Sequence record: NC_061440.1
Length of the DNA stretch: 64,000 nt
Strand: one strand, 5' to 3'
Shown: piece by piece, positions 13,500 to 60,933 of the stretch
Numbering within the stretch: the stretch's first letter is position 1
Layout: each line of letters begins with the position of its first letter
The notes under the pieces: model-generated
The model's input: only the letters and a program-made list of their open reading frames with translations
The model's database searches: none
Told to the model about the DNA's origin: nothing
Position numbers and translations under genes: made by a program

Positions 13500-13508
13500 T
13501 ATTTACAG
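13500..13508 (-). promoter_or_regulatory. CTGTAAATA promoter-like motif
   Basis: Recurrent 9-mer directly upstream of a gene start. Confidence 0.55.
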
Positions 13509-13856
13509 ATTCTGTAAGCGCTGCCACACAACGAATTTGACGTTTAGGGCATGTTCTTCACTCTCGGCAGCACGTCGGGGTTCATACTTAGGAGCGTACT
13601 GACGCAGATGGTCCTGACGGACTGCGAGTTGCGCTTCAATTTTGTGGATTGGATTCAGCACTTGACTGTACGAATGGTCTTCGATGATAACAAGGTTATC
13701 AATACGGAGAACACCAGGAACTTCAAACACTGTGGGCAGTACGCCGGGTTTGAATGCTGAACCCATAACTGTCTCATGGTATTCAACAAGCGCTTTAACC
13801 AACAAGCGGCCTGCGGATTGACTCAGTGTAAGATTGTACTCAGTACGGAATTCCAT
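13503..13856 (-). CDS. Hypothetical protein (117 aa)
   Basis: ORF with GGAG SD in a co-oriented gene run. Confidence 0.7.
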   Translation of the reverse strand: MEFRTEYNLTLSQSAGRLLVKALVEYHETVMGSAFKPGVLPTVFEVPGVLRIDNLVIIEDHSYSQVLNPIHKIEAQLAVRQDHLRQYAPKYEPRRAAESEEHALNVKFVVWQRLQNL

Positions 13857-24660: not shown

Positions 24661-27600
24661 TTACACTGCCTTGTTCTTGGTAGTGGTCAGTTTCAGACGA
24701 TCAAGAGCCGTCGTCAACTTCTTGATGTTCGTGATGTTGTAGCCTGCTTTCACGATCTTGTTGATACGTGCTTTCGCAGTAGCGACATTCTTCACGAAGC
24801 CAATCCACATACCTGGAGAAACATCGAAGGTACCAAACTTACGAGTGTTCGGAATCTTCGTACCGACGAAACGTTTCATCTGCGGGTTAGTGTTCAGGTC
24901 GAACATGATACGCAGACGATCTTCCATTACCATCGGGTATGCCTTGACGTGTTTCTTATCAGAGGCTGCCTTGTGGCGAATCAGGAAGAACTGTTTCAAC
25001 TGCTCCTGAGCTTTCAACGCCAGTTTGATGTTGAAGCCCATACGCGGCGTAGACTCATCGAAGAAGTCCAGCACGAACTCCAAGCGCTTCTCGGAAGGCT
25101 TGTCGAATGCCAGTTTCTTCTTAACCTCAATGAAATCGAGCATCTTCTCGAAGTCTTCATAGTAGGCACAGTCGTAATACACGTAGTCACCGAACTCCAC
25201 GAAGTCGAATGCCTTGAGGGCTTTCGCATCAGGGTCGGTAGCGTTCGCGTAAATAGCCACGAAGCCGTTGTACACGGTAGGCGTCAGTTCGAGCGCCATG
25301 TCTGCACCAGTCGCTTCTTCAACAGCGGCAGCAACAGGTTTCTTACGACGAGTCGTGTTATCCAACACAGGCAGGTCAGCAGGCTTACGACGACGAACAC
25401 GGCCAGCAGCCTCAGCAACACCTTCGTTGATTGGCTTACCTTCTGCTTTGTTCGTAGCACGTTGTTTGGCGCGAGCGGTCTTACGCGCTACAGCCACAAC
25501 CTTCTTCTCTGTCTCAACGGTATCGGCAGTTTCTGTCTCGTCCTTAATCGTATCTTCAATTTCAATACGATTCGCTTCGGCCGTAGCACGTTTGCGATCT
25601 TTCTCGTTCGCCCACGGTTTACGCGCTTCGAAGAACTTCTTGAGATCAGCCTTGTCGACCTTAGTTGCGATGTGGACTTTGTTGGCAGAAATGCTAACAG
25701 TCTCACCTGTACCAGCCAGACGCACACGCACCGTACTGATAGGACTATCTGCACGGAGTTTGCCGTCAACTGTACGCGCAGTCACAGACACGATAACACC
25801 ATTGCCGTACTCAGTAACGACAGGTGCACGGTTCAGAGAATCTTTCAGGTTCTCACCGTTCGTGAAGTTGCGGTTACGTGTCCAGTCCAGCAGACGCTCC
25901 AGACCCCAGCCGTAGCGATCAGGAATCTTCTGGTTGGCAACAAACGGAGTCTGCTCCATAACACGGAAGTCGTTCAGCGCTGGCGTAGCTGGCAGTGCCT
26001 GCATAGCCGCAACAGTCGTCTTACGCATCTCATGGAATTCCTGAGACTCGATTTCGTTCAGGTCGCGCTTGGCAAAGAAGTACTGGGCGAAGTCTTCCAT
26101 CGTGTTGTTGTCGATGAGCAGTTTCGCACTCATCTTGATCGGGTCCAGTTTGTACTGGTCGAGTGCTTCGTAACGCTGGTTGCCCTTCTCATCGAAGCGC
26201 GTTTTCTCCAGTGTCTTCCACATCAGACGAGCGACCTTACCAACTTCAAGGGTCTTGTTCGTCATTACCCAGTCAATGAACACAACTTCACGAGCCATGT
26301 CGCCTGGCTTACCGTTCTCATCCAGTTTTGCAGCAGCAACGTCAGGACGGAAGATACGCGCAGTAGACTGATCGTAAGTACCTGGTGACCACGGAGTATC
26401 GCAGCGGATGATACGGCTACCCATCTGCATGTTGTGGCCTTCGGAGATTGCCTGTTCGTTCGCAATCAGAATCTGGACATTGTTGTCAGTTTTGAATGCG
26501 TCGAGGTTAGCGTCTTTGTTCTGGCCCAGCTTACCAACTTCACCGTGATACACTACAGCAACTTTCTTGTAGTTCTCAGGCAGAGCGTTGTAGATAGCGT
26601 TAGCCGCACGAACGTAGCGCGTAAAGACAATCAGCTTGCCCTGCACCTCTGGTTTCCAGTAGTCCGGATCGTCCGGAGGCGGAACCATTGAAGGCGGTAA
26701 GGCTTGACGTTTGTACTCTTCGGACTGCTTACGTGCCAGATACTTCTGACCGTTGTAGACAGCAATGTCCAGTTCACGAGGAGTAACGCCTGGCTTCCAG
26801 TCGAAGATCTGCTGTTCACCAACCATCGGGTCACGTTCAGGCTGCACTTCGAAGTGCTTCTTGATACGGTCGATAATGGTCAGCACTTTCGCAGATACGA
26901 AGTTGGTAACACCAGCGGCTTCAAACGTCAGACGTGCAACGTCATCACCCATCGGGTCAGTCAACATCATTTCCATACGCTGGAAGTACATGTTCAGGTC
27001 GGCGTTACCTGCGAGCAGTGCGCCCAGGTCATCACCTTCCTCGATATCGTCTTCGTCAATGTCGGAAGCGTTATCATCAGCGCCACCAGCATCATCGTCT
27101 TCGTCATCGTTACCAGCAGAGGCTTTGCGCTTCGCAGCGTTGGCCGCGTCCTGCAATTTCTCCAGCACCTGTTCGTACATCGCGTTATACACCTCTTGGT
27201 GCAGCGCGGAGTTAGGAACAGACGGGTCATCGATCTCAACCTGAATGAAGGTATCAATCGGGTTAGGCAGCATGAACGCCCAGTGCTTACGCTTGAACGA
27301 GATGAACGCAGTGTGGTTCGCCATACGAGAGTGAGCACGACGAATCATTTCGATATCGTCTTTCGCACCATCATACGCAACGTCCAGTGAATCACCGAAC
27401 ATCGCAGGCGTCATCAGCGCAGCCTGGCCAACGATATCACGCACACGGTCAGTCACCAGCGTACCAGTAGCGATACGAGCATAGCGAACGGACGGAGCAG
27501 TGAATACCGCTTTGGTGTTGAAGTGCACCTGAGAGCCCGCCTGACCACCAGAGAAGTTCTTCACTTTATGCGACTCATCGAGCAGCACATAGCTGAAACG

Positions 27601-30510
27601 GAAGCGGTTAACGAACTCCACAGCACCACGCACACGAACACGCACACCGCCGATATCAACGTTGAACGTACCAGTCTGGAGGAAGCTCAGGCCAACGATA
27701 TAGATCGTGTTGCGCGGAGCCTGCTGGATAACGTCATACATGCGGTCTTCGCCCCACGTATTAACAGTGTCAGCAGTGATAGGCACTGCGTTCCAACCAT
27801 CAACAACTTTGTGGAGGTCATCACACCAGTTCGCTACGAGGTTAGACGGACAGATGATCAGAGGACGAATCGTTTCTTCGCCAAGGTCATCCAGCTCTTT
27901 GATTAGAGCAGCAACGTCGGTCAGACCGATGATTGTCTTACCGCCGCCAGGTGCGATAAAGATTGTTGCGAAGCGTGGACGACGACGCAGAGTTTTGTGC
28001 GCTTCAACCTGATGCGGTAGTAACGCTGCACCTGCTTTCAGACCAGGGATACGGATATCTTCAATCGTGATACCGCTGTCCGGTTTCAGCTTCTCAATCT
28101 CCACTTCGGCCTGTTCGAAGTATTCGAGTGATTTAGGAATCACATCGCTGTACATCGTGGCGAACGGCAGAATGATTTGTTGCAGACGGTCAGAGCCTGG
28201 GGCCTGTTCGTCTTCAATCAGAGAGCTGAACAACTTCTTACGATCACTACGCGCCAGAGCCTGAGTCACCTCACGATACAACGCACCACCGAAGTAGTTA
28301 TTCAGTCGCGCCATGTCAGACAGCTTGGAGCTTTCACCCATCACGAAGTAGTGAGTGTGGTTCGGCAGAGATTCGGTTGCAGCCTGAATGCTACCCATCT
28401 CATTGAGAGAGGTCATAATCAGGTTAGACCCACGCAGACCAGCAGCATCGTTCAGCACACGAAGCATCACGCGCATCATCGTCATTGCAGGGCGTTCGTT
28501 AGCGAGGTCTGGAATTGAGAAGTCGTTCTCAATCAGGTTCTGATACAGGTTCTGGTCCATCGGGCTTTCGGCCAATGAAGCATTCTCTGCGTCCATACCG
28601 ACAGCAACACGCGCCTGCTGCACCAGAGTTTTCAGATCAGGAACTTGTTTGTTCTTGAGCATGAACTCATAGGTCTGACAGGTAGATGCGATAATCTGCA
28701 CCAGCTCATGGAGGTTAGAACCTTCGGTGCTGTTATACTTGATGGTACTGTCTGAGACAGCTTCCACCAGACGGCCAGCGCCAGATTCTGCTTTCGCCGC
28801 TTCGATCATCATGTCGTTAGACACGCGATATGCAGCCATACCACCAGAAGACTGATTGTGGTGGATGTTACCGATTACGTTAGATGCAGAACGGAAGTTA
28901 GGTGCTTCACCAGGCTCTGCGAAGTCGTAGCCAAGTGAGTCAGCAACGTCCAGAGAGTTCGGCGCTTTCATGCCTACGGTACGTGTCTCTTTAACATCGA
29001 GACCGCCACCATTGGACGTGTTCACGATCAGCGCGAAGTCAGGGTCAATGCCGATGCACACGTTACTGAAACGAGAGAGCGACTTGGCCTTGGTCTGCAC
29101 TTCACGGTCGAAGTCCAGATTGCCGTTCTGAATTGCGAACATGTTGGTACGCAGGGTATCGTGCTCGGTAGACAGAGGCACACCCTTTTCGAACAGGTCT
29201 TCGAGTACGCTGTTGAGAGAAGACTCGTAGGTCTTAACCATCTCAATGTCGATATCTTCACGACGAGGCAGCACTGCGAGAGTACCGTTCGGCATGATCG
29301 TCAGACCGTTATCGTCTGCAACCACATCGTTTACCACATAGCCAAACTTCTCACGGAGTTTCTTCAACTCAGGCAGAGTGGTGGCCGAGGTAACGTAGCG
29401 TGGAATACGCGCAGCACGAGTGATACCAGTACGAGTAGAGCCAGCAACACGGAAGTAGTAGCTCGCCCAACCCTGGAACCAACGATACAGACACATGGTC
29501 TGCGTGTCAGCACCCTGAGAGATGTACTCGACCATTTCTTTTTCGAAGTTAACGATCAGGCCGCCTTCAACGCGAACGTCAGTAGCGAGAGCGACAGGGT
29601 TAAAATCGACAGGCGTATCGTGGCTGATTTTCATCGCTTGAATCTTGCGATCAATCATCGCCTTGCCTGGGATAGGACGAATACCGATCGTCATGAAATC
29701 GCCCAGCGCTTCGGCAGCACCTTTGTCCAGATTACGGAACAGGTCGATATCCATGTTGTGCATCAGCGGGTGAATGGAGCGCAGAGCCGCGTTATACACA
29801 GTCCAGTCTTTATCGAGAGGAATGCGGACCATCTTCGTTTCGAATGCGTTGGAGTTGGTGCGCTCAACGCCGAAGATATCTTTGTACAGAGTCTTCGCCA
29901 CACGAATCGCAGCCTGTGCGATATCAGAACTGTAGGTCTGAATGTTGGCGCGTTCGAAGTTGGCGTCATTGTCCACACGAGGACGGTCGCTACCCTGATT
30001 GTTCAGGACGTTGAAGTTACCGTTCGAGGCCAGAGGACTTGTCGGGCATGGCGTACCAGACATGATAATGTCACGACCGCCTGGGAAGCGCGTACTATTT
30101 TCAATCACGGCACCAGATGCTGCGGACAGGTGTTCAGCCAGAGAGGTCTTAATCTCACGACTCAACTTGTCGCCGTTCAGTGACATATTGATACGCATGA
30201 TGGACAGATCGATGTTGTTCTTAACACGCTTAACAAAATCGTCTGGCGCTACTTCCAGCATGTCTTCGAACTCTGCACCGTTGGTAACGATGTAGTTGAT
30301 CAAATCGAATGCGGCGTAGATGCGAGCAACGGTAGATGCGGTGAACACTGCAAGGGTTTCGTAGTTACGACGAGACTTCCCTGTAGCGTACATTTTCGAC
30401 ATTTTACCATCGAACTCGGGCGGCAACGTCTTCACAGCCAGAGCCTGATTAAACGTATCGGCGATCTGCTGGGTTGCGGTTGCTGAGGTACTGATCATTT
30501 GATTCATCAT
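24661..30510 (-). CDS. Giant SNF2/SWI2-family helicase/ATPase (1949 aa)
   Basis: APGGGKT, LIICPSNLV..W, LLDESH, ATGT, EGHNMQ, PWSPG..DQSTARIFR; about 800-aa unknown N-terminal region; acidic linker. Confidence 0.85.
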   Translation of the reverse strand: MMNQMISTSATATQQIADTFNQALAVKTLPPEFDGKMSKMYATGKSRRNYETLAVFTASTVARIYAAFDLINYIVTNGAEFEDMLEVAPDDFVKRVKNNIDLSIMRINMSLNGDKLSREIKTSLAEHLSAASGAVIENSTRFPGGRDIIMSGTPCPTSPLASNGNFNVLNNQGSDRPRVDNDANFERANIQTYSSDIAQAAIRVAKTLYKDIFGVERTNSNAFETKMVRIPLDKDWTVYNAALRSIHPLMHNMDIDLFRNLDKGAAEALGDFMTIGIRPIPGKAMIDRKIQAMKISHDTPVDFNPVALATDVRVEGGLIVNFEKEMVEYISQGADTQTMCLYRWFQGWASYYFRVAGSTRTGITRAARIPRYVTSATTLPELKKLREKFGYVVNDVVADDNGLTIMPNGTLAVLPRREDIDIEMVKTYESSLNSVLEDLFEKGVPLSTEHDTLRTNMFAIQNGNLDFDREVQTKAKSLSRFSNVCIGIDPDFALIVNTSNGGGLDVKETRTVGMKAPNSLDVADSLGYDFAEPGEAPNFRSASNVIGNIHHNQSSGGMAAYRVSNDMMIEAAKAESGAGRLVEAVSDSTIKYNSTEGSNLHELVQIIASTCQTYEFMLKNKQVPDLKTLVQQARVAVGMDAENASLAESPMDQNLYQNLIENDFSIPDLANERPAMTMMRVMLRVLNDAAGLRGSNLIMTSLNEMGSIQAATESLPNHTHYFVMGESSKLSDMARLNNYFGGALYREVTQALARSDRKKLFSSLIEDEQAPGSDRLQQIILPFATMYSDVIPKSLEYFEQAEVEIEKLKPDSGITIEDIRIPGLKAGAALLPHQVEAHKTLRRRPRFATIFIAPGGGKTIIGLTDVAALIKELDDLGEETIRPLIICPSNLVANWCDDLHKVVDGWNAVPITADTVNTWGEDRMYDVIQQAPRNTIYIVGLSFLQTGTFNVDIGGVRVRVRGAVEFVNRFRFSYVLLDESHKVKNFSGGQAGSQVHFNTKAVFTAPSVRYARIATGTLVTDRVRDIVGQAALMTPAMFGDSLDVAYDGAKDDIEMIRRAHSRMANHTAFISFKRKHWAFMLPNPIDTFIQVEIDDPSVPNSALHQEVYNAMYEQVLEKLQDAANAAKRKASAGNDDEDDDAGGADDNASDIDEDDIEEGDDLGALLAGNADLNMYFQRMEMMLTDPMGDDVARLTFEAAGVTNFVSAKVLTIIDRIKKHFEVQPERDPMVGEQQIFDWKPGVTPRELDIAVYNGQKYLARKQSEEYKRQALPPSMVPPPDDPDYWKPEVQGKLIVFTRYVRAANAIYNALPENYKKVAVVYHGEVGKLGQNKDANLDAFKTDNNVQILIANEQAISEGHNMQMGSRIIRCDTPWSPGTYDQSTARIFRPDVAAAKLDENGKPGDMAREVVFIDWVMTNKTLEVGKVARLMWKTLEKTRFDEKGNQRYEALDQYKLDPIKMSAKLLIDNNTMEDFAQYFFAKRDLNEIESQEFHEMRKTTVAAMQALPATPALNDFRVMEQTPFVANQKIPDRYGWGLERLLDWTRNRNFTNGENLKDSLNRAPVVTEYGNGVIVSVTARTVDGKLRADSPISTVRVRLAGTGETVSISANKVHIATKVDKADLKKFFEARKPWANEKDRKRATAEANRIEIEDTIKDETETADTVETEKKVVAVARKTARAKQRATNKAEGKPINEGVAEAAGRVRRRKPADLPVLDNTTRRKKPVAAAVEEATGADMALELTPTVYNGFVAIYANATDPDAKALKAFDFVEFGDYVYYDCAYYEDFEKMLDFIEVKKKLAFDKPSEKRLEFVLDFFDESTPRMGFNIKLALKAQEQLKQFFLIRHKAASDKKHVKAYPMVMEDRLRIMFDLNTNPQMKRFVGTKIPNTRKFGTFDVSPGMWIGFVKNVATAKARINKIVKAGYNITNIKKLTTALDRLKLTTTKNKAV

Positions 30511-35109: not shown

Positions 35110-36184
35110 TCAGATTGCGTAGCTGGTCGTTATACCCACCTTCGATTAGCGCTCTCGCCATTGACACGTGGTTGGAGTTCGCTGTACGCACTACCTTAGC
35201 CTGATAGTCAGGAACGTTTTGCATGTTCTGATTCAGGTTGTAGAAGTAGCTACGCACGAAGTTCGTTCGTTCCACGTTACTCGCTTCCATATCGCTGGTG
35301 TCCTGTGTAGGAGTCAGCAACAGGTAGAGGGCAGCAAGCAGTTCAGGACTCTGATCAACAATCGGCGAGGCGAGCGAAGCAGCAATCTTCATCAGGCCTT
35401 TTGCAACGAAGTCAACCACAGTCTTCTCGATGTACGCCGTGCCAGCTTTGCCCACGTTAGGCAGATACAGGCCAGGCAGAATGAAGATACAGAAGTACAG
35501 CGGAAAGTCTTTACGCATCACGTCGGGGATAAGCATCTCCGAGTAATCTTTCCAGATGTTCACGTTGAAGTGCCACTCATCGTATGGCACTGTACGCATC
35601 AGGTTCGATACCGATAGGTCTTTCACTTGGTTCGCCTGCGATGCAAGATCGCGAGCGCTCTGCGAAGGAGCAAGGTTCGAACTCGATACCAGTTGAACGT
35701 AGTTGCGGGTGACAACACCCACAGTGTTATACGTCACATTCAACATCTCAACGCCGTTACCGTTCAGGCCGAAGATAACAGAACGAGGAAGACCGATAGT
35801 GATGTACTCGTTGTTATTGTCCACGCCCCACAAGCGCCAGTAACGCCCGCGACCAAGTTGAGTCATAGGCTGCGGGAGAATACGGTTGGCGCGAGCTTTC
35901 AGGCAGAACGTGAAACAGATACCGCTGTCAATCATAATCACCGAATCATCTGGACGATTCGAATAACCCATCGACATATCGTTATCGGTACTGTACACGT
36001 TTACCAGAGTGAAGTTCTGAGCCTTAGTGAAAGGCATCTGCGCTTCAATCAAATAGCCGAGGACTTGTCGCAGGATAGTATCGAGCACATAAGGAGAAGC
36101 AGAACGCATTTGCTGTGGACGATACTGACCACTATACGTGTTCTCCTTGAATGTGCGATCTACCTTGAAGTGCGTCAACGCCAT
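35078..36184 (-). CDS. Putative virion structural protein (368 aa)
   Basis: Long ORF with TAATG coupling. Confidence 0.65.
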   Translation of the reverse strand: MALTHFKVDRTFKENTYSGQYRPQQMRSASPYVLDTILRQVLGYLIEAQMPFTKAQNFTLVNVYSTDNDMSMGYSNRPDDSVIMIDSGICFTFCLKARANRILPQPMTQLGRGRYWRLWGVDNNNEYITIGLPRSVIFGLNGNGVEMLNVTYNTVGVVTRNYVQLVSSSNLAPSQSARDLASQANQVKDLSVSNLMRTVPYDEWHFNVNIWKDYSEMLIPDVMRKDFPLYFCIFILPGLYLPNVGKAGTAYIEKTVVDFVAKGLMKIAASLASPIVDQSPELLAALYLLLTPTQDTSDMEASNVERTNFVRSYFYNLNQNMQNVPDYQAKVVRTANSNHVSMARALIEGGYNDQLRNLIEYLGLTKAD

Positions 36185-37479
36185 TACTTAACCGACTGCT
36201 TGAGCAAACGTTTCTGCTGCGGGTTCAGGCCCATAACGTCTGCGATCTCATCGATCTTACGCAGCGTCAACACGCCTTTAGCAGTACCGCCAGAACCTGT
36301 CAGGCTGACCTTAACGAACTCGCGTCCGTTACGACCGTTAACGATCTGGTGAATGATACTGTTCTTACCGCCGCGGCCAGCGCGAAGTGCGGTGCTCGCC
36401 ATGCCCAGAATTTCGGTGATAGCTTCTTTCTTCTCGGTCGGGCTGAGGCCCTGCACCAGACGAACATACAGGCTATCATTCTGCACACGCACGTTGTCGA
36501 AGATCTCTTTCTTACGACCACGAATATCGTGTTGAGCATTACCCAGCTGAGTTGTATCCCGCAGGTTCTGAGTAGAGCGGTTGATTGGCTTACGTTCGCT
36601 GTAGTTCAGGAAGCCGTCAACAGCCATGAGCTGGTTGATAGTACGCTTCATTTCTGGAGCAGTAGCAATCAGACGACCCATAGGGAATGACCCAGGAACT
36701 TTCTCGTCAACGAGTGACGTCAGGAAGTTCTCACTGATACCGCTTGCAACCGCGATCGTGGTAGACAGCACCAGAGCGTAGTTCGGATAATGCAGGCCTT
36801 CTGAGTTCACGAAGTTATCAATGAACACATAGGTCTGGAAGCAGATAGGGTCAGTACCCGACGCGATGAAGGTACGTGTACGAATCTTCGAATAGTCTTC
36901 TTTATTCAGAATCTTCGACAGGTAGTTAGCGATAGTCGCAGCCAGCTTGGTGTGTTCTTTCGGAGCGCCATTCTTAACGTCGATGCTCATCAGTTTGACC
37001 AGCTTCTGCTGTTGGTTCTTCGCTTGCTCGATGACGCTCAACAGGCTCTTGGCAGCGGCATTCTGATCTTTGAACGCGCTGAAAGTTTTGCTGCTGAGAA
37101 TCTGGTAGGCAACAGACAGTTCACCGATTGCCTGAGAGAGATTGCTCACCTGTTGGTTGTACTGTGCTTTAGAACGCACGTCAGTGATATCAATCTTCGT
37201 CAGGTCAATAACCTGGTTGAGGTCAATCGCTTTAGCCTGTTTGCCTTTGATTTTACCTTCGAGATCTGCCAGCTCAACAGCCTTAGGGCTAGCGCTGACA
37301 GACAGGAGTTTCTTCGGAATAGTGACTGAGGTGGCATTAGCGATTACTTTATCAAGTACATTACGGAATTCTTTCGCTGTGCGAGCACCACGCAGGGCAG
37401 CCATATTCCCAGAGTTATAGTCAACAGATGCGCTGATACTGCTAACTTCATTGTTTTTGGCAGTCTTAGCCATGATCAT
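36184..37479 (-). CDS. Putative virion/head protein with N-terminal SSISA tag (431 aa)
   Basis: GAGGA SD, CTAATTT upstream, and SISA and SVSA motifs. Confidence 0.65.
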   Translation of the reverse strand: MIMAKTAKNNEVSSISASVDYNSGNMAALRGARTAKEFRNVLDKVIANATSVTIPKKLLSVSASPKAVELADLEGKIKGKQAKAIDLNQVIDLTKIDITDVRSKAQYNQQVSNLSQAIGELSVAYQILSSKTFSAFKDQNAAAKSLLSVIEQAKNQQQKLVKLMSIDVKNGAPKEHTKLAATIANYLSKILNKEDYSKIRTRTFIASGTDPICFQTYVFIDNFVNSEGLHYPNYALVLSTTIAVASGISENFLTSLVDEKVPGSFPMGRLIATAPEMKRTINQLMAVDGFLNYSERKPINRSTQNLRDTTQLGNAQHDIRGRKKEIFDNVRVQNDSLYVRLVQGLSPTEKKEAITEILGMASTALRAGRGGKNSIIHQIVNGRNGREFVKVSLTGSGGTAKGVLTLRKIDEIADVMGLNPQQKRLLKQSVK

Positions 37480-41003: not shown

Positions 41004-41369
41004 TTATGCCACTACTTCAAGGTCATGATCACCAGAGTTCCACACAAGCTCACGAATGTTGCGTGGCATGATGATGCAACCAGACGATGCAGTCCCCGGT
41101 GCTTTGATACTATCACCGTGCATCTGGAACGCAGAGCGGCCGAACATCACGTTCTCTTTTGCTGGAGTCAAATCCATAGCATACGGACCAGTCTTCTGAC
41201 TTTGGCGTGGAGCATTCAGTGTGTAATGCCCTACAGGCAGAGGTCCCATACCCACGATGTTCTGACTATCGTGTTTGTTCTTGTGCTCGCCTTTACCGGC
41301 ATAGCCGGTAGCGACAAGTTTATTAGCCGAGTTATACAGACGGCCTGTTGTTTGCTCATACTTCCACAT
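41004..41369 (-). CDS. Tlde1/DUF2778 L,D-transpeptidase-fold protein (121 aa)
   Basis: GYAG, GPLP.G.Y, GRSAFQMHGD and SSGCII (His...Cys catalytic pair). Confidence 0.85.
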   Translation of the reverse strand: MWKYEQTTGRLYNSANKLVATGYAGKGEHKNKHDSQNIVGMGPLPVGHYTLNAPRQSQKTGPYAMDLTPAKENVMFGRSAFQMHGDSIKAPGTASSGCIIMPRNIRELVWNSGDHDLEVVA

Positions 41370-42427: not shown

Positions 42428-42937
42428 TTACTCCTTAATCATTTTGACACGCGTGTGGTCGAAGATACCAAACGTAGGCACATCATTGTGCTCACCTTCG
42501 TTACCTTTGATTGAGTCGTACCCAGCAAGTTTGAGTATCTTGCTAATCTCGGTGTACTCATCCCACCACATGTAGACTCGCTTATACTGAGATGCAGGTA
42601 TAAGTTTGTTTAGCGCGTCTAACCTTTTAACGAGAGTCATAGCTTCATCTTTGCCCACCATATGTAACTGGAAGGCTTCCATGATAAGCTGTTTCACTCG
42701 TCTATGAATCTCAGCGAACTTTACTTCCGTCCACAGAGAACGGAACTTCAGGCTGGCGTATCGGCCTGGGTCCGCATGAAATTTGTAGAGGCGCCCACCT
42801 TCCGCATACTTATCGGCATACGCACGATCAGGAGTTACCCAAGTCATGTGTTGCTTTTTAGCATGTTCATCTGACCAGTCTTCTGCAAGACCGCGATAGT
42901 AGATTGTGGGCGCACTCAGGCTGACGAAGACCTGCAA
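42428..42937 (-). CDS. ADP-ribosyltransferase-fold-like protein with N-terminal FVSLSA tag (169 aa)
   Basis: YYRG, WVTPDRAYADKYA, GRLY, GYDSI and TFGIFD..RVK follow the ART-PolyVal pattern; TTG start abuts the upstream TAA. Confidence 0.5.
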   Translation of the reverse strand: MQVFVSLSAPTIYYRGLAEDWSDEHAKKQHMTWVTPDRAYADKYAEGGRLYKFHADPGRYASLKFRSLWTEVKFAEIHRRVKQLIMEAFQLHMVGKDEAMTLVKRLDALNKLIPASQYKRVYMWWDEYTEISKILKLAGYDSIKGNEGEHNDVPTFGIFDHTRVKMIKE

Positions 42938-43894
42938 TTACTTGTCCAGACGCTCGAACTTAACGCCATCGTCACTCTGGGTAAAGCGAATGACGCCAGG
43001 GATTTCGAAGCCATCGCGGTTCTTCTGCACAGGAATCTTTTTGTCTTCCAGGTGCATACGCAGTTCGGTCATGACGATGTTGTTCTTACCGATTGCTTTG
43101 CCTTTCAGGCCTTTCGCGTTGTAAGTCACATCACCAGATTTCGTCTTCGTATTGAACTTGATGCCGACAGTATCGAGCAGGTCAGGCAGCGCTTTATGGA
43201 CTTTAGCAGACAGTTCGCCTGGGTCCATCTTCGCAGCTTTGGCGCGGGCTGGTGACTTAGCGCCCGCCACAACGCCTTTACGTGCTTTGTTAGGAGCAGC
43301 TTTCTGCGTTTTCTTAACAGCAGCGCGAGGTCCCATGCCAGGTTTAGCCGTAGACTTCTTCTGACCGATAGCGTCGAAAGCAGCTTCTTTCAAGAACTTC
43401 GGTTTGAAGGTACCACGCTTACCTGTAACGCCGAACTCAGTCAATTTGGTAGAGCGGATTGCTTTCAGTGCCTTGTCAGCACCTACACCAGTTTTGATAT
43501 CAGCAGCAGACAGAGGTAGATTCAGACCACCCAGACCGTGAGCTTTAGCAACCTTGTTCGCTTCCCGCAGAGCAGCCTTAGCCGTTTTGATTTCGGCAGT
43601 AGCTTTCGCCTTCTCAGTTTTACGAGTGGCCATCAGCTTGGTGCGCTTATCACCACGAGGCAGTTGGCGAGCCTTTGTCGCAGCAGTGTTGGACTTGATT
43701 GAGGCAGTAATGCCGGCAACAGCAGCAGTCTTAGCTTTTTTCAAATGACCAACAACAGCCTGTAATTCTGCTTTCTTGGCAGAGTTGACAAGCAGCGTAG
43801 TAACGCCACCGAACTTATGCACACGGTATGCAGGTTTCTTTGCAGCGGATTCTGACACCAGAGAGTCAGCAATATTGATACGAATGAGAGCCAT
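42938..43894 (-). CDS. Lys/Ala-rich basic protein with N-terminal LVSESA tag (about 318 aa)
   Basis: Start moved to ATG 43894 (MALIRINI) after AAGGA. Confidence 0.75.
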   Translation of the reverse strand: MALIRINIADSLVSESAAKKPAYRVHKFGGVTTLLVNSAKKAELQAVVGHLKKAKTAAVAGITASIKSNTAATKARQLPRGDKRTKLMATRKTEKAKATAEIKTAKAALREANKVAKAHGLGGLNLPLSAADIKTGVGADKALKAIRSTKLTEFGVTGKRGTFKPKFLKEAAFDAIGQKKSTAKPGMGPRAAVKKTQKAAPNKARKGVVAGAKSPARAKAAKMDPGELSAKVHKALPDLLDTVGIKFNTKTKSGDVTYNAKGLKGKAIGKNNIVMTELRMHLEDKKIPVQKNRDGFEIPGVIRFTQSDDGVKFERLDK

Positions 43895-43904
43895 TTTGTT
43901 TTCC

Positions 43905-44510
43905 TTATACCAGCGCACGGCCGGGAAGATCGAAGTTTTTACCAGCGGAGTAATCACCCAGCGCTTGGTAGAGAGAGTTACGCAACATCTGTTCGATGAT
44001 ATCGGAGTTATGAGCCGATGCGTCTTTGAATGCGACTTCAATCGAATCAGTTCTCGGATTTACGACAGCGTAACGCAGCGGGCAGATCGTTTGTGCTTCA
44101 CACCAGGCATCAATACGCGGCTGTAAGTCAGGCGTGATTGGGATCTGGAAGTCGGCTAGCGTAAACACTACGCTTTGAATAGGCGGTGGTGCAGACAGCG
44201 AATTGTATTTACCTTTCGTGTCGAGTCGCTCCATGGCCATAGAGGCATCATAGACAGACTGATAACCTTCGCCAACGGTTTTGATATCAGCCATCTTGAA
44301 GCTATGCGTTGACAAGCCTTTGCGAATCAGCTTGGCGATCTTGAGATCGTAATCACCAGAATCGTCAGTAGCAAAGGCAACGAACGCGTAGAAGGAGATC
44401 CCATCAGTTTCGCGCAGCAGACGATGGTCCAACACACGAAAGCCCACGACACTCGAAAGTGCCTGGGCTGTTACCTGAGGCCCCTTAGATAAGGAGACGA
44501 AGATTTGCAT
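43905..44510 (-). CDS. Hypothetical protein with N-terminal FVSLSK tag (201 aa)
   Basis: TAATG coupling. Confidence 0.7.
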   Translation of the reverse strand: MQIFVSLSKGPQVTAQALSSVVGFRVLDHRLLRETDGISFYAFVAFATDDSGDYDLKIAKLIRKGLSTHSFKMADIKTVGEGYQSVYDASMAMERLDTKGKYNSLSAPPPIQSVVFTLADFQIPITPDLQPRIDAWCEAQTICPLRYAVVNPRTDSIEVAFKDASAHNSDIIEQMLRNSLYQALGDYSAGKNFDLPGRALV

Positions 44511-44848
44511 TAACGCAGAGTCTTCAACGCCTGTTTAGCTTTCGCCAAATCAGTGAAGTATTTGGCATCGTCATCGAACTCTGGTTCCATGCGAATCTCG
44601 ATGCCAGATACGTTGAAGCCAATATCTTCATCTTCATCTTTGGTGACCATGCCGAAACGAGCTACGCCTTCTTTGTAGCTAATGAAACGGAAGTCGATGA
44701 TATCTTCCGGACCGCTCAGGTCAGAAGGCATACCATCGTCCAGCAGATCGAAGAACTCTTTCTTCGTCAGCTTAGTGAACACGCTTGCCATAGCGTTGGC
44801 AGAAGTAGACGCTACAGATTCGTCCAGATTCAGTTTGATAAGAGTCAT
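44510..44848 (-). CDS. Acidic hypothetical protein with N-terminal VASTSA tag (112 aa)
   Basis: The MTLIKLNL start parallels MALIRINI. Confidence 0.7.
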   Translation of the reverse strand: MTLIKLNLDESVASTSANAMASVFTKLTKKEFFDLLDDGMPSDLSGPEDIIDFRFISYKEGVARFGMVTKDEDEDIGFNVSGIEIRMEPEFDDDAKYFTDLAKAKQALKTLR

Positions 44849-44850
44849 AG

Positions 44851-45420
44851 TTAAATTCCAACCTGTTTAGTGATTGTGATAACACGCTGGTACCAACCAT
44901 AAATGTTATCTTCCTGGGTTTCATCTGCCTTAGCGATGTTCTTCAACTTCGCAATACGACAGCCGTTGTAGGCATAAGCCAATACTTTGATATCGCGTAC
45001 CTTGACATAGGCGTCGAGTGCAGCGATAGTCTTAGGTCCGATATTTGCAGCAGGGGCAAAATCTGGGTAGAGTTTACCGCGCTGGTTCAGGATATTCAAC
45101 TGGTCTTGCAGTTCAGCAATCGCAGCCGGTGGTCCTGAGTTAACTGCATAGTCAAATACCCACAACGCCAGTTCTTGGCTGTACTTAGCAAGCTGATCGC
45201 ATTTGCAGAAGTCCCAGAAATTAGCGCTGTAGATAGCGTATGCGATTTCGTACGGCAGATTTTGCATATCGCCTTTATAGCCATATGCACGAGCATTCTT
45301 CTCCGTGACACCCCAACGTGTAGGGCCACCACGATCCGCCGCGCGATTTGTATACTTCTCACCACCTTCTCGGTCAATGACCTCGGCAATGGCTTTCTTA
45401 CGAAACGTCAGAGCGTCCAT
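44851..45420 (-). CDS. Glycoside hydrolase family 108 lysozyme with PG-binding-3 domain (endolysin-like, 189 aa)
   Basis: REGG..Y...DRGGPT.WGVT, YW/FW, FDYAVNSGP and GW..R. Confidence 0.9.
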   Translation of the reverse strand: MDALTFRKKAIAEVIDREGGEKYTNRAADRGGPTRWGVTEKNARAYGYKGDMQNLPYEIAYAIYSANFWDFCKCDQLAKYSQELALWVFDYAVNSGPPAAIAELQDQLNILNQRGKLYPDFAPAANIGPKTIAALDAYVKVRDIKVLAYAYNGCRIAKLKNIAKADETQEDNIYGWYQRVITITKQVGI

Positions 45421-50414: not shown

Positions 50415-50656
50415 TAGAAATACTCGACAGTTTCTTCCTGTATCAGACCTTTACCATGCGTCTGCTCAAACACTTCGATTTCGTCCTGCGTGTACTCTGA
50501 GGACGATTCGGCGATCACATCATACGAGATGGATTCTTCGCGTGTGTCAGAAATGATTGGCTTGAGAATACGCCACAGAGGCAGAGCGATTGTTTCGCGC
50601 TTCAAGATTTTTGCTACGACAACCATTAGTGAAATACTCCAGCTGGTTCTACCCAC
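50414..50656 (-). CDS. Hypothetical protein (80 aa)
   Basis: TAATG coupling to SbcC. Confidence 0.55.
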   Translation of the reverse strand: MGRTSWSISLMVVVAKILKRETIALPLWRILKPIISDTREESISYDVIAESSSEYTQDEIEVFEQTHGKGLIQEETVEYF

Positions 50657-50841
50657 AGTTCAGGCGCGTTGTACTGCGCACGTAATTCGTTCAGGCGATC
50701 ATCGGTCAGTGGACGATCGGAGACTAAGATGCACTGCGGCACCTTTTCTTCTTTGCCTGTTACAGGATGAATGTCGCGGTCGTGGCGCATGACATTCCAA
50801 CGTTTTGATACGGAGATATTGATTAAGGTATTGCGTTCCAT
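50626..50841 (-). CDS. Hypothetical protein (about 71 aa)
   Basis: Start likely at ATG 50841, downstream of CTGTAAATA at 50880. Confidence 0.5.
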   Translation of the reverse strand: MERNTLINISVSKRWNVMRHDRDIHPVTGKEEKVPQCILVSDRPLTDDRLNELRAQYNAPELWVEPAGVFH

Positions 50842-50905: not shown

Positions 50906-50934
50906 AAAAAGAAGGGCCACCATTAGGCAGCCCC
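50906..50934 (-). terminator. Rho-independent terminator
   Basis: GC hairpin followed by a T run. Confidence 0.65.
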
Positions 50935-51207
50935 TGCGAATACTTTGCGCACCCCGTTATCCAGATAGTGATCTGCGTAGAAGGGTCCATTTTCGTTTTC
51001 AATACCAATGCGCCGACATAGCTGACGACGTAAGCGCCTAGGCCATACCAGCTCATCTTCAATCAGATGAATGACGGCAGGTAGTGCTTCCAGCTGCGTC
51101 ATAGTTAGGTCACGAATCTTGTCGTCAATGCGACACAGCTCCGCATAGTCCTGTTCAGGTGTTGGTACGTTGCGCACAGGCTTAGAAAGATCTACGGTGA
51201 GTTCCAT
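50923..51207 (-). CDS. Hypothetical protein (94 aa)
   Basis: TGATG coupling. Confidence 0.7.
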   Translation of the reverse strand: MELTVDLSKPVRNVPTPEQDYAELCRIDDKIRDLTMTQLEALPAVIHLIEDELVWPRRLRRQLCRRIGIENENGPFYADHYLDNGVRKVFAGAA

Positions 51208-51653
51208 CAGTATCTCCGTGGCTTCTTAGGTTTCTTGATAGTGGATTTAGGACGCTTGATTGCTCTCAGAGCTTTACGCGCCTCAATAATCTGCTTGGAC
51301 AATTCAGAGCGACGAGCCTTAATCTGGTCCGTGTCCTGCTCAGTGCCTTTGAGTTTATCAAGGCGATTCCATTCTTTGACCAGACGATCAACTACACCAG
51401 CACGAGACACCCGCTGCTGATTGGTACGCACAATGTCCTGCTGCGTCTTCACCGAATCGCGTGTACGATTAACTTCTTCACGCGCTGACTTAACGCCTTT
51501 GGTATCACCCTCAGATTGTTTGTCGTTCAGCTTCTTACGCGCTAACTGCGAGCGGCGTTGTGCTCCCTTGAGATCATCTTTCGAATTGTCCAAGGAGACT
51601 TGAGTATCTTCGAGCGGGCTGGTACGCGCACTCAAACTGATAAGTATCTTCAT
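51207..51653 (-). CDS. Basic coiled-coil protein with N-terminal LISLSA tag (148 aa)
   Basis: GAGG SD; N-terminal motif. Confidence 0.75.
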   Translation of the reverse strand: MKILISLSARTSPLEDTQVSLDNSKDDLKGAQRRSQLARKKLNDKQSEGDTKGVKSAREEVNRTRDSVKTQQDIVRTNQQRVSRAGVVDRLVKEWNRLDKLKGTEQDTDQIKARRSELSKQIIEARKALRAIKRPKSTIKKPKKPRRY

Positions 51654-51784: not shown

Positions 51785-52321
51785 TCATGCGGATTGAAGT
51801 TGAAGAATTTCTTCGTCTTCTATATCCGCGCCAGACCACGAACGAATCACGGATGCGTTTCCACGATTGCCTGTCAGCATCATCTTAACTGATGGCTTGG
51901 CATCGCGTTCTGCGTAATAGTCGGCGAGAGCTTTCTCTGTACCGAACCATAAAATGGAGTGACCACCCTTAGGGCAGATCAAGAATTGAGTAGGACGTTG
52001 TGGAACGTTCAACGTCAGATAGAAGTCACCAGCGCCAGTAGGACCAAGCATTGGCATAGGCTTCATGATCTGCTGAAAGTCTCCAGCATCTTTAAGACGT
52101 GTATCGCCCAGCAACCAGATAGCACCTTCTTCTCCCTCACGCACAGCACTCAAGGTACCTTTACGTGTTGTGATAGAGCCAAAAGTGTCTTGATCGAAAC
52201 GGGCTAGACCGAAGATGAGTGATGCGAGTTTCTTCAGGTCAGGGGTCGTGCATGGACTATCAATTTTTGCCATGCCCTCGGACCCTACTGTAATCTTCGA
52301 GAGTGATACAAAGATTTCCAT
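51785..52321 (-). CDS. Hypothetical protein with N-terminal FVSLSK tag (178 aa)
   Basis: CTAATTT upstream; N-terminal motif. Confidence 0.75.
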   Translation of the reverse strand: MEIFVSLSKITVGSEGMAKIDSPCTTPDLKKLASLIFGLARFDQDTFGSITTRKGTLSAVREGEEGAIWLLGDTRLKDAGDFQQIMKPMPMLGPTGAGDFYLTLNVPQRPTQFLICPKGGHSILWFGTEKALADYYAERDAKPSVKMMLTGNRGNASVIRSWSGADIEDEEILQLQSA

Positions 52322-60273: not shown

Positions 60274-60933
60274 TCACTTTTTCTGCGAAACGCGCTTCCC
60301 GAGCTTGACGCCTATTTGCGTCAGAATGCGTTTCACTGTTTCGCCGTCGTGTTCCTGCATTGCAGTCGCTAAACGTTCGCCCTGTTCACGCGATAGCTCA
60401 GGCATAACCATTTTAAGCATCTGCGAGCGCATTTTGGCTGATTTAGACTTGCCGCGAGACAGAGATTGTGTGTCCATTTCGTTTGCAACACGGCTCATGG
60501 TGCGCTGCACACGACGATCTGCGAAGATATCAGCAAAGATATTGCCAAACAGGTCCTGGAACGAACGTCCACCGCCCATAATGTCGTCTTTTGTGAAACG
60601 AACAGGCTGTCCAAGCGCATTCTGCTTATTGCAGTGCGTGGATTCCACTTCGTTTTGAGTACGTCCACCAGCACGGAAGTTCTCGTCAGGGCGTGACGCT
60701 TTACCCTCTGCGCCCGGCTTAGTGTTGCCGTTACGCAGGTCTGCATCGCCTTCAACAGCCTTATCAGGGTCGAACATGTCGTCCGCTGTCTCGCTTTGGT
60801 TAGCGTCAAACGGAATCTTGCCCGTCAGCTTATTCTGGTCAGGCCAGCTCTTTGGAATATCAGAAGCAGGTTGCGCCTTGTTCGTCATATCGCCGTTAGC
60901 TTCGCTATTCAGGCTGATCATAATGCGTGTCAT
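60274..60933 (-). CDS. Hypothetical protein with IMISLNS tag; probable virion protein (219 aa)
   Basis: AGGAG SD; N-terminal motif variant. Confidence 0.75.
   Translation of the reverse strand: MTRIMISLNSEANGDMTNKAQPASDIPKSWPDQNKLTGKIPFDANQSETADDMFDPDKAVEGDADLRNGNTKPGAEGKASRPDENFRAGGRTQNEVESTHCNKQNALGQPVRFTKDDIMGGGRSFQDLFGNIFADIFADRRVQRTMSRVANEMDTQSLSRGKSKSAKMRSQMLKMVMPELSREQGERLATAMQEHDGETVKRILTQIGVKLGKRVSQKK

What the first reader, a model, noticed from the sequence alone, without database searches (positions are those of the whole stretch)
42428..44848. Shared N-terminal [VIL]-S-x-S-(A/K) tag on about 10 unrelated proteins: candidate capsid-targeting or prohead-protease signal
Seen in sequence: MQVFVSLSA (42937), MQIFVSLSK (44510), MEIFVSLSK (52321), MKILISLSA (51653), MTRIMISLNS (60933), MALIRINIADSLVSESA (43894), MTLIKLNLDESVASTSA (44848), ..GAVVSISA (24052), ..NEVSSISA (37479) and MMNQMISTSA (30510, the SNF2 giant). 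The rest of these proteins is unrelated. Four of them are consecutive in this interval, and most lie in transcription units headed by CTAATTT. Established knowledge: T4 internal proteins carry a short N-terminal capsid-targeting sequence removed by gp21, and phiKZ-type head proteases cleave after S/A/G-x-E. Inference: this phage marks head cargo with a different, Ser-based S-x-S|A/K signal, which would mean a new protease specificity and a tool for loading proteins into capsids.
Basis: partly seen in the sequence, partly recalled or inferred. Interest (0 to 1): 0.72.

Follow-up and report, generated by a model that had tools for sequence, protein, structure and literature searches.

The report
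Shared capsid-loading tag on phage proteins
About a dozen unrelated proteins of this giant Erwinia phage start with the same eight-residue peptide (M-x-I-F-V-S-L-S), which most likely loads them into the phage head and is then cut off, as the T4 capsid-targeting sequence is, but with a different Ser-x-Ser sequence.

Summary
The window is Erwinia jumbo phage pEa_SNUABM_22 (Alexandravirus), record 124001-188000. All ten quoted N-termini are present, and the rest of those proteins are unrelated by BLAST.

- **Enrichment:** the motif is strongly enriched at N-termini (10 hits against 0.47 expected in the window, P about 1e-10).
- **Level of conservation:** Ser codons switch between AGY and TCN, so selection acts on the peptide.
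- **Spread:** the tag recurs on orthologous and non-orthologous proteins in phages Y3, fHe-Yen9-02, JA11 and in metagenomic contigs.

The capsid-targeting and protease-site reading is well supported, but only by comparison.

- **Tag swapping:** homologous ART-PolyVal ADP-ribosyltransferases carry either this tag or a T4-type tag (MKTFKQFITE) at the same position.
- **T4-like parallel:** a T4-like contig has a run of seven genes with the T4-type tag.
- **Head proteins:** Ser-x-Ser sits at the flexible propeptide boundary of the major capsid protein, upstream of the portal core in 87 of 87 homologues, and at the N-terminus of the gp21-like prohead protease.
- **Virion evidence:** in the relative PaBG, published mass spectrometry finds the homologue of the tagged 1949-aa helicase in virions.

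No cleavage or packaging has been shown experimentally. I rate it a new variant of a known kind.

The parts
42428..42937 (-). gp196, 169 aa. The tag MQVFVSLS|A (TTG start, codons 42911-42937) is followed directly by a stand-alone ART-PolyVal-type ADP-ribosyltransferase domain.
   Evidence: phmmer against representatives finds 84 homologues, many embedded in 2-5 kaa polyvalent proteins. In those proteins the matched region is Pfam PF18760.
42938..43894 (-). gp197, 318 aa, Lys/Ala-rich and basic. It has a long ('class II') leader, MALIRINIADSLVSES|A.
   Evidence: Orthologues in Y3 keep the leader and S-E-S. The PaBG virion protein gp83 starts with MLIKINLLEAVAAKA.
43905..44510 (-). gp198, 201 aa, unknown fold. 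Tag MQIFVSLS|K (codons 44484-44510).
   Evidence: Orthologues are MKIFVSLAA (Y3), MRISISLSA (fHe-Yen9-02) and MEILVSISA (JA11).
44510..44848 (-). gp199, 112 aa, acidic. Class II leader MTLIKLNLDESVASTS|A. The STSAN stretch is identical to the site in the major capsid protein.
51785..52321 (-). gp211, 178 aa. Tag MEIFVSLS|K. CTAATTT lies 43 nt upstream.
51207..51653 (-). gp210, 148 aa, basic coiled-coil protein. Tag MKILISLS|A.
50923..51207 (-). gp209, 94 aa. Degenerate tag MELTVDLS|K, with Asp at P3.
   Evidence: JA11 has a comparable MIVEIDLS|V.
50626..50841 (-). gp208, 71 aa. Possible leader MERNTLINISVS|K.
   Evidence: This rests on a motif match only.
60274..60933 (-). gp222, 219 aa. Variant tag MTRIMISLN|S, with Asn at P1.
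   Evidence: Y3 has MRVMISLNS and fHe-Yen9-02 has MKISISLND.
24661..30510 (-). gp180, 1949-aa SNF2-type helicase giant. Tag M(M)NQMISTS|A.
   Evidence: SNF2-rel_dom and Helicase_C domains. Orthologues are MINISTSA, MLISTSK and MQIFSTSA. The PaBG homologue gp202 (29% identity over 1966 aa, N-terminus MGSLFTLNSLSAA) is virion band 1 at 221 kDa.
22874..24052 (-). gp178, 392 aa, Lys/Ala-rich. Leader MYEMTMNSGAVVSIS|A.
36184..37479 (-). gp188, 429-431 aa. Leader ..AKTAKNNEVSSIS|A, with a second LLSVS|A near residue 62. CTAATTT lies 45 nt upstream.
   Evidence: Orthologues keep both sites.
13503..13856 (-). gp167, 117 aa. Possible leader MEFRTEYNLTLSQS|A. This is the weakest member.
   Evidence: Motif match only; no orthologue check was made.
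44851..45420 (-). gp200, a GH108 endolysin. It is untagged. It is the first gene after a CTAATTT element and heads the run gp200-gp199-gp198-gp197-gp196.

Best explanation
The peptide M-[KQER]-[IVL]-[FLI]-[IVL]-S-[LTM]-S followed by A, K or S is this phage family's counterpart of the T4 capsid-targeting sequence. The leader is usually exactly 8 residues. A longer variant reads M-x-L-I-K-L-N-L...S-E-S|A.

- **Shown:** the tag sits at the extreme N-terminus of many unrelated late-expressed proteins. It is conserved at the peptide level across the Alexandravirus, Sasquatchvirus and Salmondvirus lineage and in related metagenomic phages. It is interchangeable with the T4-type tag on homologous cargo. 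Its core, hydrophobic-S-x-S-small, is also conserved at propeptide-like positions of the major capsid protein, the portal and the prohead protease.
- **Inferred:** during prohead assembly the tag docks the cargo into the assembling core, possibly by binding the protease as a substrate. The cargo includes an ADP-ribosyltransferase, a NUDIX hydrolase, a giant SNF2 helicase, basic Lys/Ala-rich proteins and, in relatives, a GNAT acetyltransferase. The gp21-like serine protease gp147 (conserved His124 and Ser181) then cuts after the second Ser. That cut releases the leader and leaves the cargo inside the head, to be ejected into the host with the DNA.
For: 1. N-terminal enrichment and peptide-level conservation.
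2. There are 45 tag instances across seven sources, and 35 of the 45 leaders are 8 residues long. Ser occupies P3 in 42 of 45 and P1 in 39 of 45 (compiled).
3. Tag swapping. Stand-alone ART-PolyVal homologues of gp196 start either with MQIFVSLSA, MRIIISLSG or MKLILSMSA, or with MKTFKQFITEK, MKSFSQFINEK or MITFSQFISEK. In each case the tag sits 2-5 residues before the [FY]RG motif. The T4 capsid-targeting sequence is MKTYQEFIAE (PMC8442874).
4. P0169 lies on a T4-like contig carrying Gp23, Portal_T4 and gp19, inside a run of seven genes that start MKTFKQFI.E. A second ART-PolyVal subfamily shows the same swap (L016:10474-11031 against L018:591-1166 and JA11 L010:12627-13304).
5. Major capsid protein. 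G-x-[IV]-V-x-S-x-S followed by A, G, S or K is kept in all homologues of at least 55% identity. In the AF2 model it falls in the only internal segment with pLDDT below 50 (residues 66-72). Cutting there removes 19% of the protein. The PaBG capsid protein loses about 20% of its mass on maturation (PMC7412058).
6. Portal. 87 of 87 homologues have [FMV]-x-S-x-S-[ASNG] just upstream of the conserved core, against 30 expected.
7. Protease. S-x-S|F is conserved at its own N-terminus across the family, and H124 and S181 are invariant. Its best PDB fold matches are T4 gp21.
8. PaBG virion mass spectrometry finds gp202, the homologue of tagged gp180, and gp83, which has a class II-like leader.
9. The cargo types (ART, NUDIX, GNAT, SNF2) are those known from injected polyvalent proteins and T4 Alt (PMC7824862).
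10. Tagged genes sit behind CTAATTT elements that also precede sheath, baseplate and lysis genes.
Against: - No experimental data exist for this phage or its close relatives. Cleavage, the exact scissile bond and encapsidation are all inferred.
- The fold match of the protease to gp21 is weak (probability 0.69-0.77, E 0.07, TM 0.34-0.49).
- In the distant PaBG clade the capsid-protein site is not clearly S-x-S, and class I tags are rare.
- Some motif-bearing proteins are probably chance matches, for example DNA polymerase gp177.
- Two other peptidases could be the processing enzyme instead: gp146 (HExxH, next to gp147) and gp217.
- The PaBG data show virion association, not location in the head.
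Confidence: 0.75

Rival explanations
1. The motif is only a maturation cleavage site. The protease trims these proteins, but targeting to the prohead depends on other parts of each protein, and the short leader has no targeting role.
For: The same S-x-S core occurs internally in the capsid protein, portal and protease, where it cannot be an N-terminal address. In phage P1, 9 residues of DarB were not enough for targeting (PMC9024508).
Against: - The tagged proteins share nothing else that could serve as an address.
- The leader length is fixed at 8 residues in 35 of 45 cases, and P4-P6 are conserved hydrophobic residues. That is more constraint than a cleavage site alone needs.
- The tag replaces the T4 capsid-targeting sequence, which is a proven address.
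Confidence: 0.12
2. The tag is an uncleaved N-terminal beta-strand used for docking or oligomerisation. It might bind the portal, the tail lumen or a chaperone, or act as a degron read by a host protease.
For: The hydrophobic run followed by S-L-S would suit a beta-strand addition. Nothing shows directly that the tag is removed.
Against: - The motif sits in a disordered linker of the capsid protein, exactly where a propeptide should end.
- It occurs at the protease's own N-terminus.
- It is positionally equivalent to the cleaved T4 tag.
Confidence: 0.08
3. Chance, hidden paralogy, or a nucleotide-level signal (a translation-initiation or promoter element) that happens to encode similar peptides.
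For: Short Ser-rich motifs are common. The loosest form, S.S[AK], occurs 86 times in the proteome.
Against: - N-terminal enrichment has P about 1e-10.
- Codons differ at synonymous sites, including AGY/TCN serine switches.
- BLASTP finds no similarity outside the tag.
- The tag recurs on non-orthologous proteins in other phages.
Confidence: 0.02
4. It is a bacterial export signal (Sec, Tat or lipoprotein) or a beta-clamp-binding motif.
For: S-L-S|A fits the -3/-1 rule of signal peptidase I. Q-I-F-V-S-L loosely recalls the clamp motif QLxLxL, and some clamp-binding motifs are N-terminal.
Against: - The leader has only 3-4 hydrophobic residues in 8, with no positively charged n-region and no 10-15 residue h-region.
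- The cargo proteins are cytoplasmic enzymes.
- The first position is K, Q, E or R rather than a conserved Q, while the conserved residues are the two serines.
Confidence: 0.03

Closest known systems
T4 capsid-targeting sequence (MKTYQEFIAE) of internal proteins IPI-III, removed by prohead protease gp21
   Same: - It is a short (about 10 aa) N-terminal peptide shared by otherwise unrelated proteins and ending in the protease's recognition motif.
- Tagged genes lie in variable runs of consecutive small genes.
- The cargo includes ADP-ribosyltransferases and basic proteins.
- The same cargo domain is found with either tag.
   Different: - The sequence is unrelated.
- The putative P3-x-P1 is S-x-S instead of (L/I)-x-E.
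- The leader is 8 residues rather than 10.
- A second, longer leader class exists.
- There is no experimental proof here.
Prohead proteases of phiKZ (gp175, S/A/G-x-E) and SPN3US (gp245, A-x-E), and their propeptide-bearing ejection proteins
   Same: These are also jumbo-phage heads carrying many cargo proteins. The protease cuts N-terminal propeptides of the capsid protein, the portal and the cargo, and it processes itself (PMC10052503).
   Different: Those enzymes require Glu at P1, and their propeptides are often long. Here P1 is inferred to be Ser, and most leaders are only 8 residues. This phage family is not related to phiKZ; it has a sigma factor and an HK97-type capsid protein of 366 aa.
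Phage P1 DarB N-terminal capsid-targeting signal
   Same: A roughly 250-kDa helicase-type giant protein is packaged into the head through an N-terminal signal (PMC9024508). The parallel here is tagged gp180 and its virion-borne PaBG homologue.
   Different: P1 Dar proteins share no consensus N-terminus, and the signal needs more than 9 residues. Here one consensus tag is shared by many proteins.
Herpesvirus assemblin cleavage sites ((V/L/I)-x-A|S)
   Same: The protease fold class is the same as T4 gp21. A small residue sits at P1 and an aliphatic residue upstream. This comparison is from my own knowledge and was not tested here.
   Different: The residues differ (Ala|Ser against Ser|Ala/Lys), and there is no evolutionary closeness beyond the fold.

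Membership tests
Capsid-targeting sequence of the T4 type (functional class) | Short N-terminal peptide shared by otherwise unrelated proteins of one phage | tested here: met
Capsid-targeting sequence of the T4 type (functional class) | Sequence similarity to MKTYQEFIAE, ending in (L/I)-x-E | tested here: not met
   The tag is M-x-I-F-V-S-L-S and contains no Glu. T4-type tags do occur on homologous cargo in T4-like contigs.
Capsid-targeting sequence of the T4 type (functional class) | Ends in the recognition site of the phage's own prohead protease, which is also used in the capsid protein and other head proteins | tested here: inconclusive
   The same S-x-S core is conserved in the capsid protein, portal and protease N-terminus. 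Cleavage itself has not been observed.
Capsid-targeting sequence of the T4 type (functional class) | Tagged proteins are present inside virions | tested here: inconclusive
   Support is indirect only. PaBG gp202 (homologue of gp180) and gp83 are virion proteins by MALDI. No data exist for this phage.
Capsid-targeting sequence of the T4 type (functional class) | The tag is sufficient to load a foreign protein into the capsid | not testable with these tools
   This needs a reporter-fusion experiment.
T4 gp21-like (assemblin-fold) prohead serine protease, for gp147 | Fold similarity to gp21 (PDB 5JBL) | tested here: inconclusive
   The AF2 model has pLDDT 80.8. The top three PDB hits are all 5JBL chains but are weak (probability 0.69-0.77, E 0.07-0.15, TMt 0.49). 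Sequence searches of the PDB find nothing.
T4 gp21-like (assemblin-fold) prohead serine protease, for gp147 | Invariant His and Ser about 55 residues apart | tested here: met
   H124 and S181 are invariant in 39 homologues. Their catalytic role is inferred.
T4 gp21-like (assemblin-fold) prohead serine protease, for gp147 | Cleavage after Glu | tested here: not met
   The conserved candidate sites have Ser at P1. This is inferred from conservation and has not been measured.
ART-PolyVal ADP-ribosyltransferase (PF18760), for gp196 | Significant match to the family profile | tested here: inconclusive
   gp196 itself gets no Pfam hit. Its phmmer homologues (E down to 1e-28) match PF18760 over exactly the homologous region.
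Sec/lipoprotein signal peptide | Positively charged n-region, a 10-15 residue hydrophobic core and an A-x-A-type site | tested here: not met
   The leader is 8 residues with 3-4 hydrophobic ones.

The most novel reading that the evidence does not exclude
A whole lineage of jumbo phages uses an assemblin-fold prohead protease that recognises Ser-x-Ser instead of x-x-Glu. The lineage covers Alexandravirus, Sasquatchvirus, Salmondvirus and many uncultured relatives. In this reading, an 8-residue peptide that is essentially 'Met + one residue + a canonical cleavage site' is enough to load any protein into the capsid. The protease itself acts as the receptor. The tag would then read out the complete ejected effector set of each phage (ADP-ribosyltransferases, NUDIX, GNAT, SNF2 giant) directly from the genome sequence.
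Probability: 0.45. Interest if true: 0.75.

Novelty: new variant of a known kind. Interest (0 to 1): 0.64.

Why it matters
If confirmed, this gives three things.

1. **A second consensus tag.** Apart from T4, it would be the only sequence-defined consensus capsid-targeting tag shared by many cargo proteins. P1 has a targeting signal but no consensus.
2. **A new protease specificity.** Phage prohead proteases characterised so far all cut after Glu. This one would cut at Ser-x-Ser.
3. **A genome-only predictor.** The tag would identify packaged and ejected proteins in a large, poorly annotated jumbo-phage lineage where about 70% of genes are orphans.

The predicted cargo looks like a host-takeover or counter-defence kit delivered with the DNA. 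It comprises ADP-ribosyltransferases, a NUDIX hydrolase, an acetyltransferase, a giant SNF2 helicase and DNA-binding basic proteins. The tag could also be used to load proteins into Erwinia and Dickeya phage particles, as has been done with T4 and P1.

Tried and rejected
- **Pfam and PHROGs on the tagged proteins:** no informative hits. Only family-specific PHROGs of unknown function came up.
- **PDB sequence searches with the protease:** neither the single sequence nor the profile found anything except spurious zinc-finger hits on its Cys/His insertion.
- **Exact 3-mer enrichment at N-termini:** uninformative. My home-made start-codon choice was imperfect (it missed gp198), and exact 3-mers are too sparse. 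I replaced this with degenerate-pattern tests using RefSeq-consistent starts.
- **Class I tags in PaBG:** only the giant helicase and the class II-like gp83 were found. The short tag is therefore mainly a feature of the Erwinia, Dickeya and Yersinia branch and its metagenomic relatives.
- **Literature:** I found no description of this tag or of S-x-S specificity. The Y3 virion-proteome paper is not in the library.
- **Alternative readings considered and rejected:** ubiquitin-like start (MQIFV), clamp-binding motif, Sec signal, and O-glycosylation sequon. The glycosylation idea came from a glycosyltransferase gene near the protease. All four fail to explain the equivalence with the T4 tag or the positions in the capsid protein, portal and protease.
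- **Structure prediction of a tagged protein:** I then used both structure-prediction jobs on the protease and the capsid protein, so no model of a tagged cargo protein was made.
Full report
**Identity of the window**

The 64-kb window is 100% identical to Erwinia phage pEa_SNUABM_22 (NC_061440.1, 265,146 bp, genus Alexandravirus), record positions 124001-188000. This is a non-phiKZ jumbo myovirus. It belongs to the 'Lupandier' group with phages Alexandra, Y3, Yoloswag, Dickeya AD1 and JA11-33, Yersinia fHe-Yen9-02 and, more distantly, Pseudomonas PaBG and Lu11 (PMC7412058). Nearly all genes in the window are on the minus strand. I fetched the whole genome so that the motif could be judged against the full proteome.

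**Check of the observation**

- The four near-identical copies use different codons. Examples are AGC-CTG-AGT-GCG, TCC-TTA-TCT-AAG, TCA-CTC-TCG-AAG and AGT-TTG-AGT-GCG. What is conserved is therefore the peptide, not the DNA or RNA.
- In the window's 62 proteins the pattern [ILVMFA]-S-x-S-[AKS] occurs 18 times. Ten of these begin in the first 17 residues, where 0.47 are expected (P about 1e-10).
- A strict 7-residue version is expected 0.56 times in the 83,101-aa proteome. It matches six real genes, each time at residues 1-5. All other six-frame matches lie in non-coding frames.
- With the first 20 residues removed, BLASTP finds no similarity among the tagged proteins. The exception is gp136 and gp153, which share a KMPT-N domain.
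- Further members lie outside the window: gp123 (NUDIX, MMINVSLSA), gp136 (MLILLSESA), gp153 (MILSVSA..., KMPT-N plus a long acidic tail) and gp252 (MSLIKIEGVQSLSA).

**Anatomy of the tag**

I compiled 45 instances from this phage, Y3, fHe-Yen9-02, JA11 and four metagenomic contigs.

- The short form is M-[KQER]-[IVL]-[FLI]-[IVL]-S-[L>T,M]-S followed by A (22), K (9) or S (6).
- The leader is exactly 8 residues long in 35 of 45 cases.
- Ser occupies P3 in 42 of 45 and P1 in 39 of 45.
- A second, longer leader reads M-x-[LV]-I-[KR]-[LI]-N-[LI]-...-[LV]-x-S-[ET]-S|A. It is found on gp197, gp199, gp252, three Y3 proteins and, in degenerate form, PaBG gp83.
- The tags are kept in orthologues that are otherwise only 25-80% identical, for example gp198 and the giant helicase.
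- They also appear on proteins with no orthologue in pEa_SNUABM_22. Examples are a 256-aa Y3 protein, a GNAT acetyltransferase in fHe-Yen9-02, and an ART-PolyVal protein plus 595-aa and 654-aa proteins in JA11.
- Gene content at these loci differs between relatives.

**Comparison with T4-type tags (the key evidence)**

gp196 has no Pfam hit of its own. An exhaustive phmmer search found 84 homologues. Many are embedded in 2-5 kaa proteins, where the matched region is Pfam ART-PolyVal, the ADP-ribosyltransferase of injected polyvalent proteins.

The stand-alone homologues fall into two groups according to what precedes the [FY]RG motif:
- MQIFVSLSA, MRIIISLSG, MQIQLSLSG, MKLILSMSA or MKIFVSLAS.
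- MKTFKQFITEK, MKSFSQFINEK, MITFSQFISEK, MNNFKQFLIEK and similar.

The second group matches the T4 capsid-targeting sequence MKTYQEFIAE. That peptide is cut off by gp21 and is sufficient to load foreign proteins into T4 heads (PMC8442874).

One protein of the second group lies on a T4-like contig carrying Gp23, Portal_T4 and gp19. It sits in a run of seven genes that all start MKTFKQFI.E, one of which is a second ART-PolyVal protein. Three metagenomic contigs (L018, L021 and, for structural genes, L020) show the mirror image, with runs of consecutive genes starting MKLILSMSA, MTKLILSVSA, MKIQLSMSK or MQIQLSLSG.

So the same cargo domain, at the same position and in the same kind of locus, carries one tag or the other depending on the phage lineage. 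This is the strongest argument that the S-L-S tag does what the T4 tag does.

**The protease-site component**

The core of the tag recurs in three head proteins.

- **Major capsid protein gp143 (366 aa).** It reads ...GELVHSTS|ANAGG at residues 62-74. Across all homologues of at least 55% identity the pattern G-x-[IVLF]-[VQIM]-x-S-x-S is retained while its surroundings vary. The Dickeya JA clade, for instance, reads EVSES|H. In an AlphaFold model (pLDDT 79.9) the only internal segment below pLDDT 50 is residues 66-72, between an N-terminal helix-strand unit and the next helix. Cutting there removes 19% of the protein. The PaBG capsid protein is reported to lose about 20% of its mass on maturation.
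- **Portal gp006.** It reads ...DFVSQS|AGGAG about 12 residues before the conserved core begins. All 87 homologues in which the core could be anchored have [FMV]-x-S-x-S-[ASNG] in that 20-residue window of an otherwise hypervariable N-terminus. Shuffling each N-terminus predicts 30.
- **Head maturation protease gp147.** It carries S-x-S|F near its own N-terminus (IRSES|FD). This is kept across the family, including PaBG (MMSRS|FA).

gp147 has invariant His124 and Ser181 and an inserted Cys/His zinc ribbon. Its model (pLDDT 80.8) has T4 gp21 (5JBL) as its three best PDB matches, although weakly (probability 0.69-0.77).

The arrangement P3-x-P1 has the same format as (L/I)-x-E in T4 and A-x-E in SPN3US, but with Ser in both specified positions. 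Placing the cut immediately after the second Ser is an inference. It rests on the T4 analogy and on the short, similar distance from the tag end to the start of the ART domain in both tag classes.

**Virion evidence**

There is no proteome for this phage. The only accessible one in the group is from PaBG, based on 14 SDS-PAGE bands analysed by MALDI.

- Band 1 (221 kDa) is gp202. This is the homologue of the tagged 1949-aa SNF2 helicase gp180 (29% identity over 1966 residues). Its N-terminus is MGSLFTLNSLSAA.
- Band 9 is gp83, an unknown protein starting MLIKINLLEAVAAKA, which resembles the class II leader.
- The authors also note multiple proteolytic processing events.

The parallel with P1 DarB is close. 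DarB is a 250-kDa helicase-type protein loaded into the head by an N-terminal signal (PMC9024508).

**Nature of the cargo**

The tagged set includes the following:
- an ADP-ribosyltransferase (gp196);
- a NUDIX hydrolase (gp123);
- the SNF2 giant (gp180);
- several Lys/Ala-rich or coiled-coil basic proteins (gp197, gp178, gp188, gp210);
- an acidic-tailed KMPT-N protein (gp153);
- in relatives, a GNAT acetyltransferase and a second ART type.

This is the repertoire known from T4 Alt and internal proteins, and from the injected polyvalent proteins discussed by Iyer and colleagues (PMC7824862).

The tagged genes are in late-looking transcription units. CTAATTT lies 30-53 nt upstream of at least 14 gene starts genome-wide. 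These include sheath, PAAR and endolysin genes, and also gp153, gp188, gp211, gp223 (heading gp222) and gp200 (heading gp199-gp196).

**Rival explanations**

- Chance, paralogy and a nucleic-acid signal are excluded by the statistics, the codon differences and the lack of similarity outside the tag.
- A Sec or lipoprotein signal and a clamp-binding motif do not fit the composition or the conserved positions.
- Two readings remain open. The tag could be only a cleavage site with no targeting role, or it could be an uncleaved docking strand.
- The fixed 8-residue length and the conserved hydrophobic P4-P6 argue for more than a cleavage site.
- The positions in the capsid protein linker and in the protease argue for cleavage.
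- The processing enzyme could in principle be the neighbouring HExxH peptidase gp146, or gp217, rather than gp147.

**Verdict**

It is a new variant of a known kind. The mechanism class (N-terminal capsid-targeting peptide plus prohead-protease site) is established in T4. The sequence, the inferred Ser-x-Ser specificity and the lineage are new as far as the searchable literature shows.

Noticed in passing
window 33901, 37518, 45453, 46365, 52364, 62079 (minus strand), and elsewhere in the genome: (G/A)CTAATTT lies 30-53 nt upstream of at least 14 gene starts. Most are structural or lysis genes: sheath, PAAR, endolysin, gp188, gp211 and gp223. It is probably the late-promoter element of this phage. 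The motif is not over-represented overall (23 against about 32 expected), but it is strongly positioned.
   Followed up: partly
window 40073-40963, 41379-42206, 45456-46313 (minus strand): Three paralogous genes (gp192, gp194, gp201) start with MQY... and share a downstream [IV]F[LF][FY]D motif. Y3 and fHe-Yen9-02 have MQF and MMY versions. This is a second N-terminally similar family interleaved with the tagged genes. Its function is unknown.
   Followed up: no
window 41004-41369 (minus strand): gp193 has a Tlde1/YkuD-like L,D-transpeptidase domain (PF10908, E 8e-16). This domain type is known from type VI secretion cell-wall effectors. The gene lies a few genes from the GH108 endolysin gp200 (window 44851-45420).
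   Followed up: partly
outside the window: NC_061440.1 100863-101537, 110432-111565, 117682-119550: The KMPT-N domain (PF20294) follows the tag directly in gp136 and gp153. It occurs twice in gp146, an HExxH metallopeptidase encoded next to the prohead protease. It may be a head-internal module.
   Followed up: partly
outside the window: NC_061440.1 111565-112344 (gp147); alignment A1: The prohead protease carries an inserted zinc-ribbon-like element with invariant C191, C194, C206 and H208. T4 gp21 lacks it.
   Followed up: partly
portal homologues P0290 and P0338 (about 1084 aa): Some portal genes of the lineage are interrupted by an intein with a LAGLIDADG endonuclease (PF14890, PF14528).
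   Followed up: no
window 37645-38316 (minus strand): gp189 is a 223-aa, extremely Lys/Ala/Pro-rich, histone-H1-like protein. Its N-terminus, MA(V/K)(K/V)(R/N)RK(T/L)TSP(T/K)DP, is conserved in Y3, fHe-Yen9-02 and JA11. It is untagged but lies among head genes.
   Followed up: no
window 42935-42940: gp196 starts with TTG immediately after the TAA stop of gp197 (TAATTG) and has no Shine-Dalgarno sequence. gp198 starts at ATG overlapping the stop of gp199 (TAATG). The four tagged genes appear to be translationally coupled.
   Followed up: no
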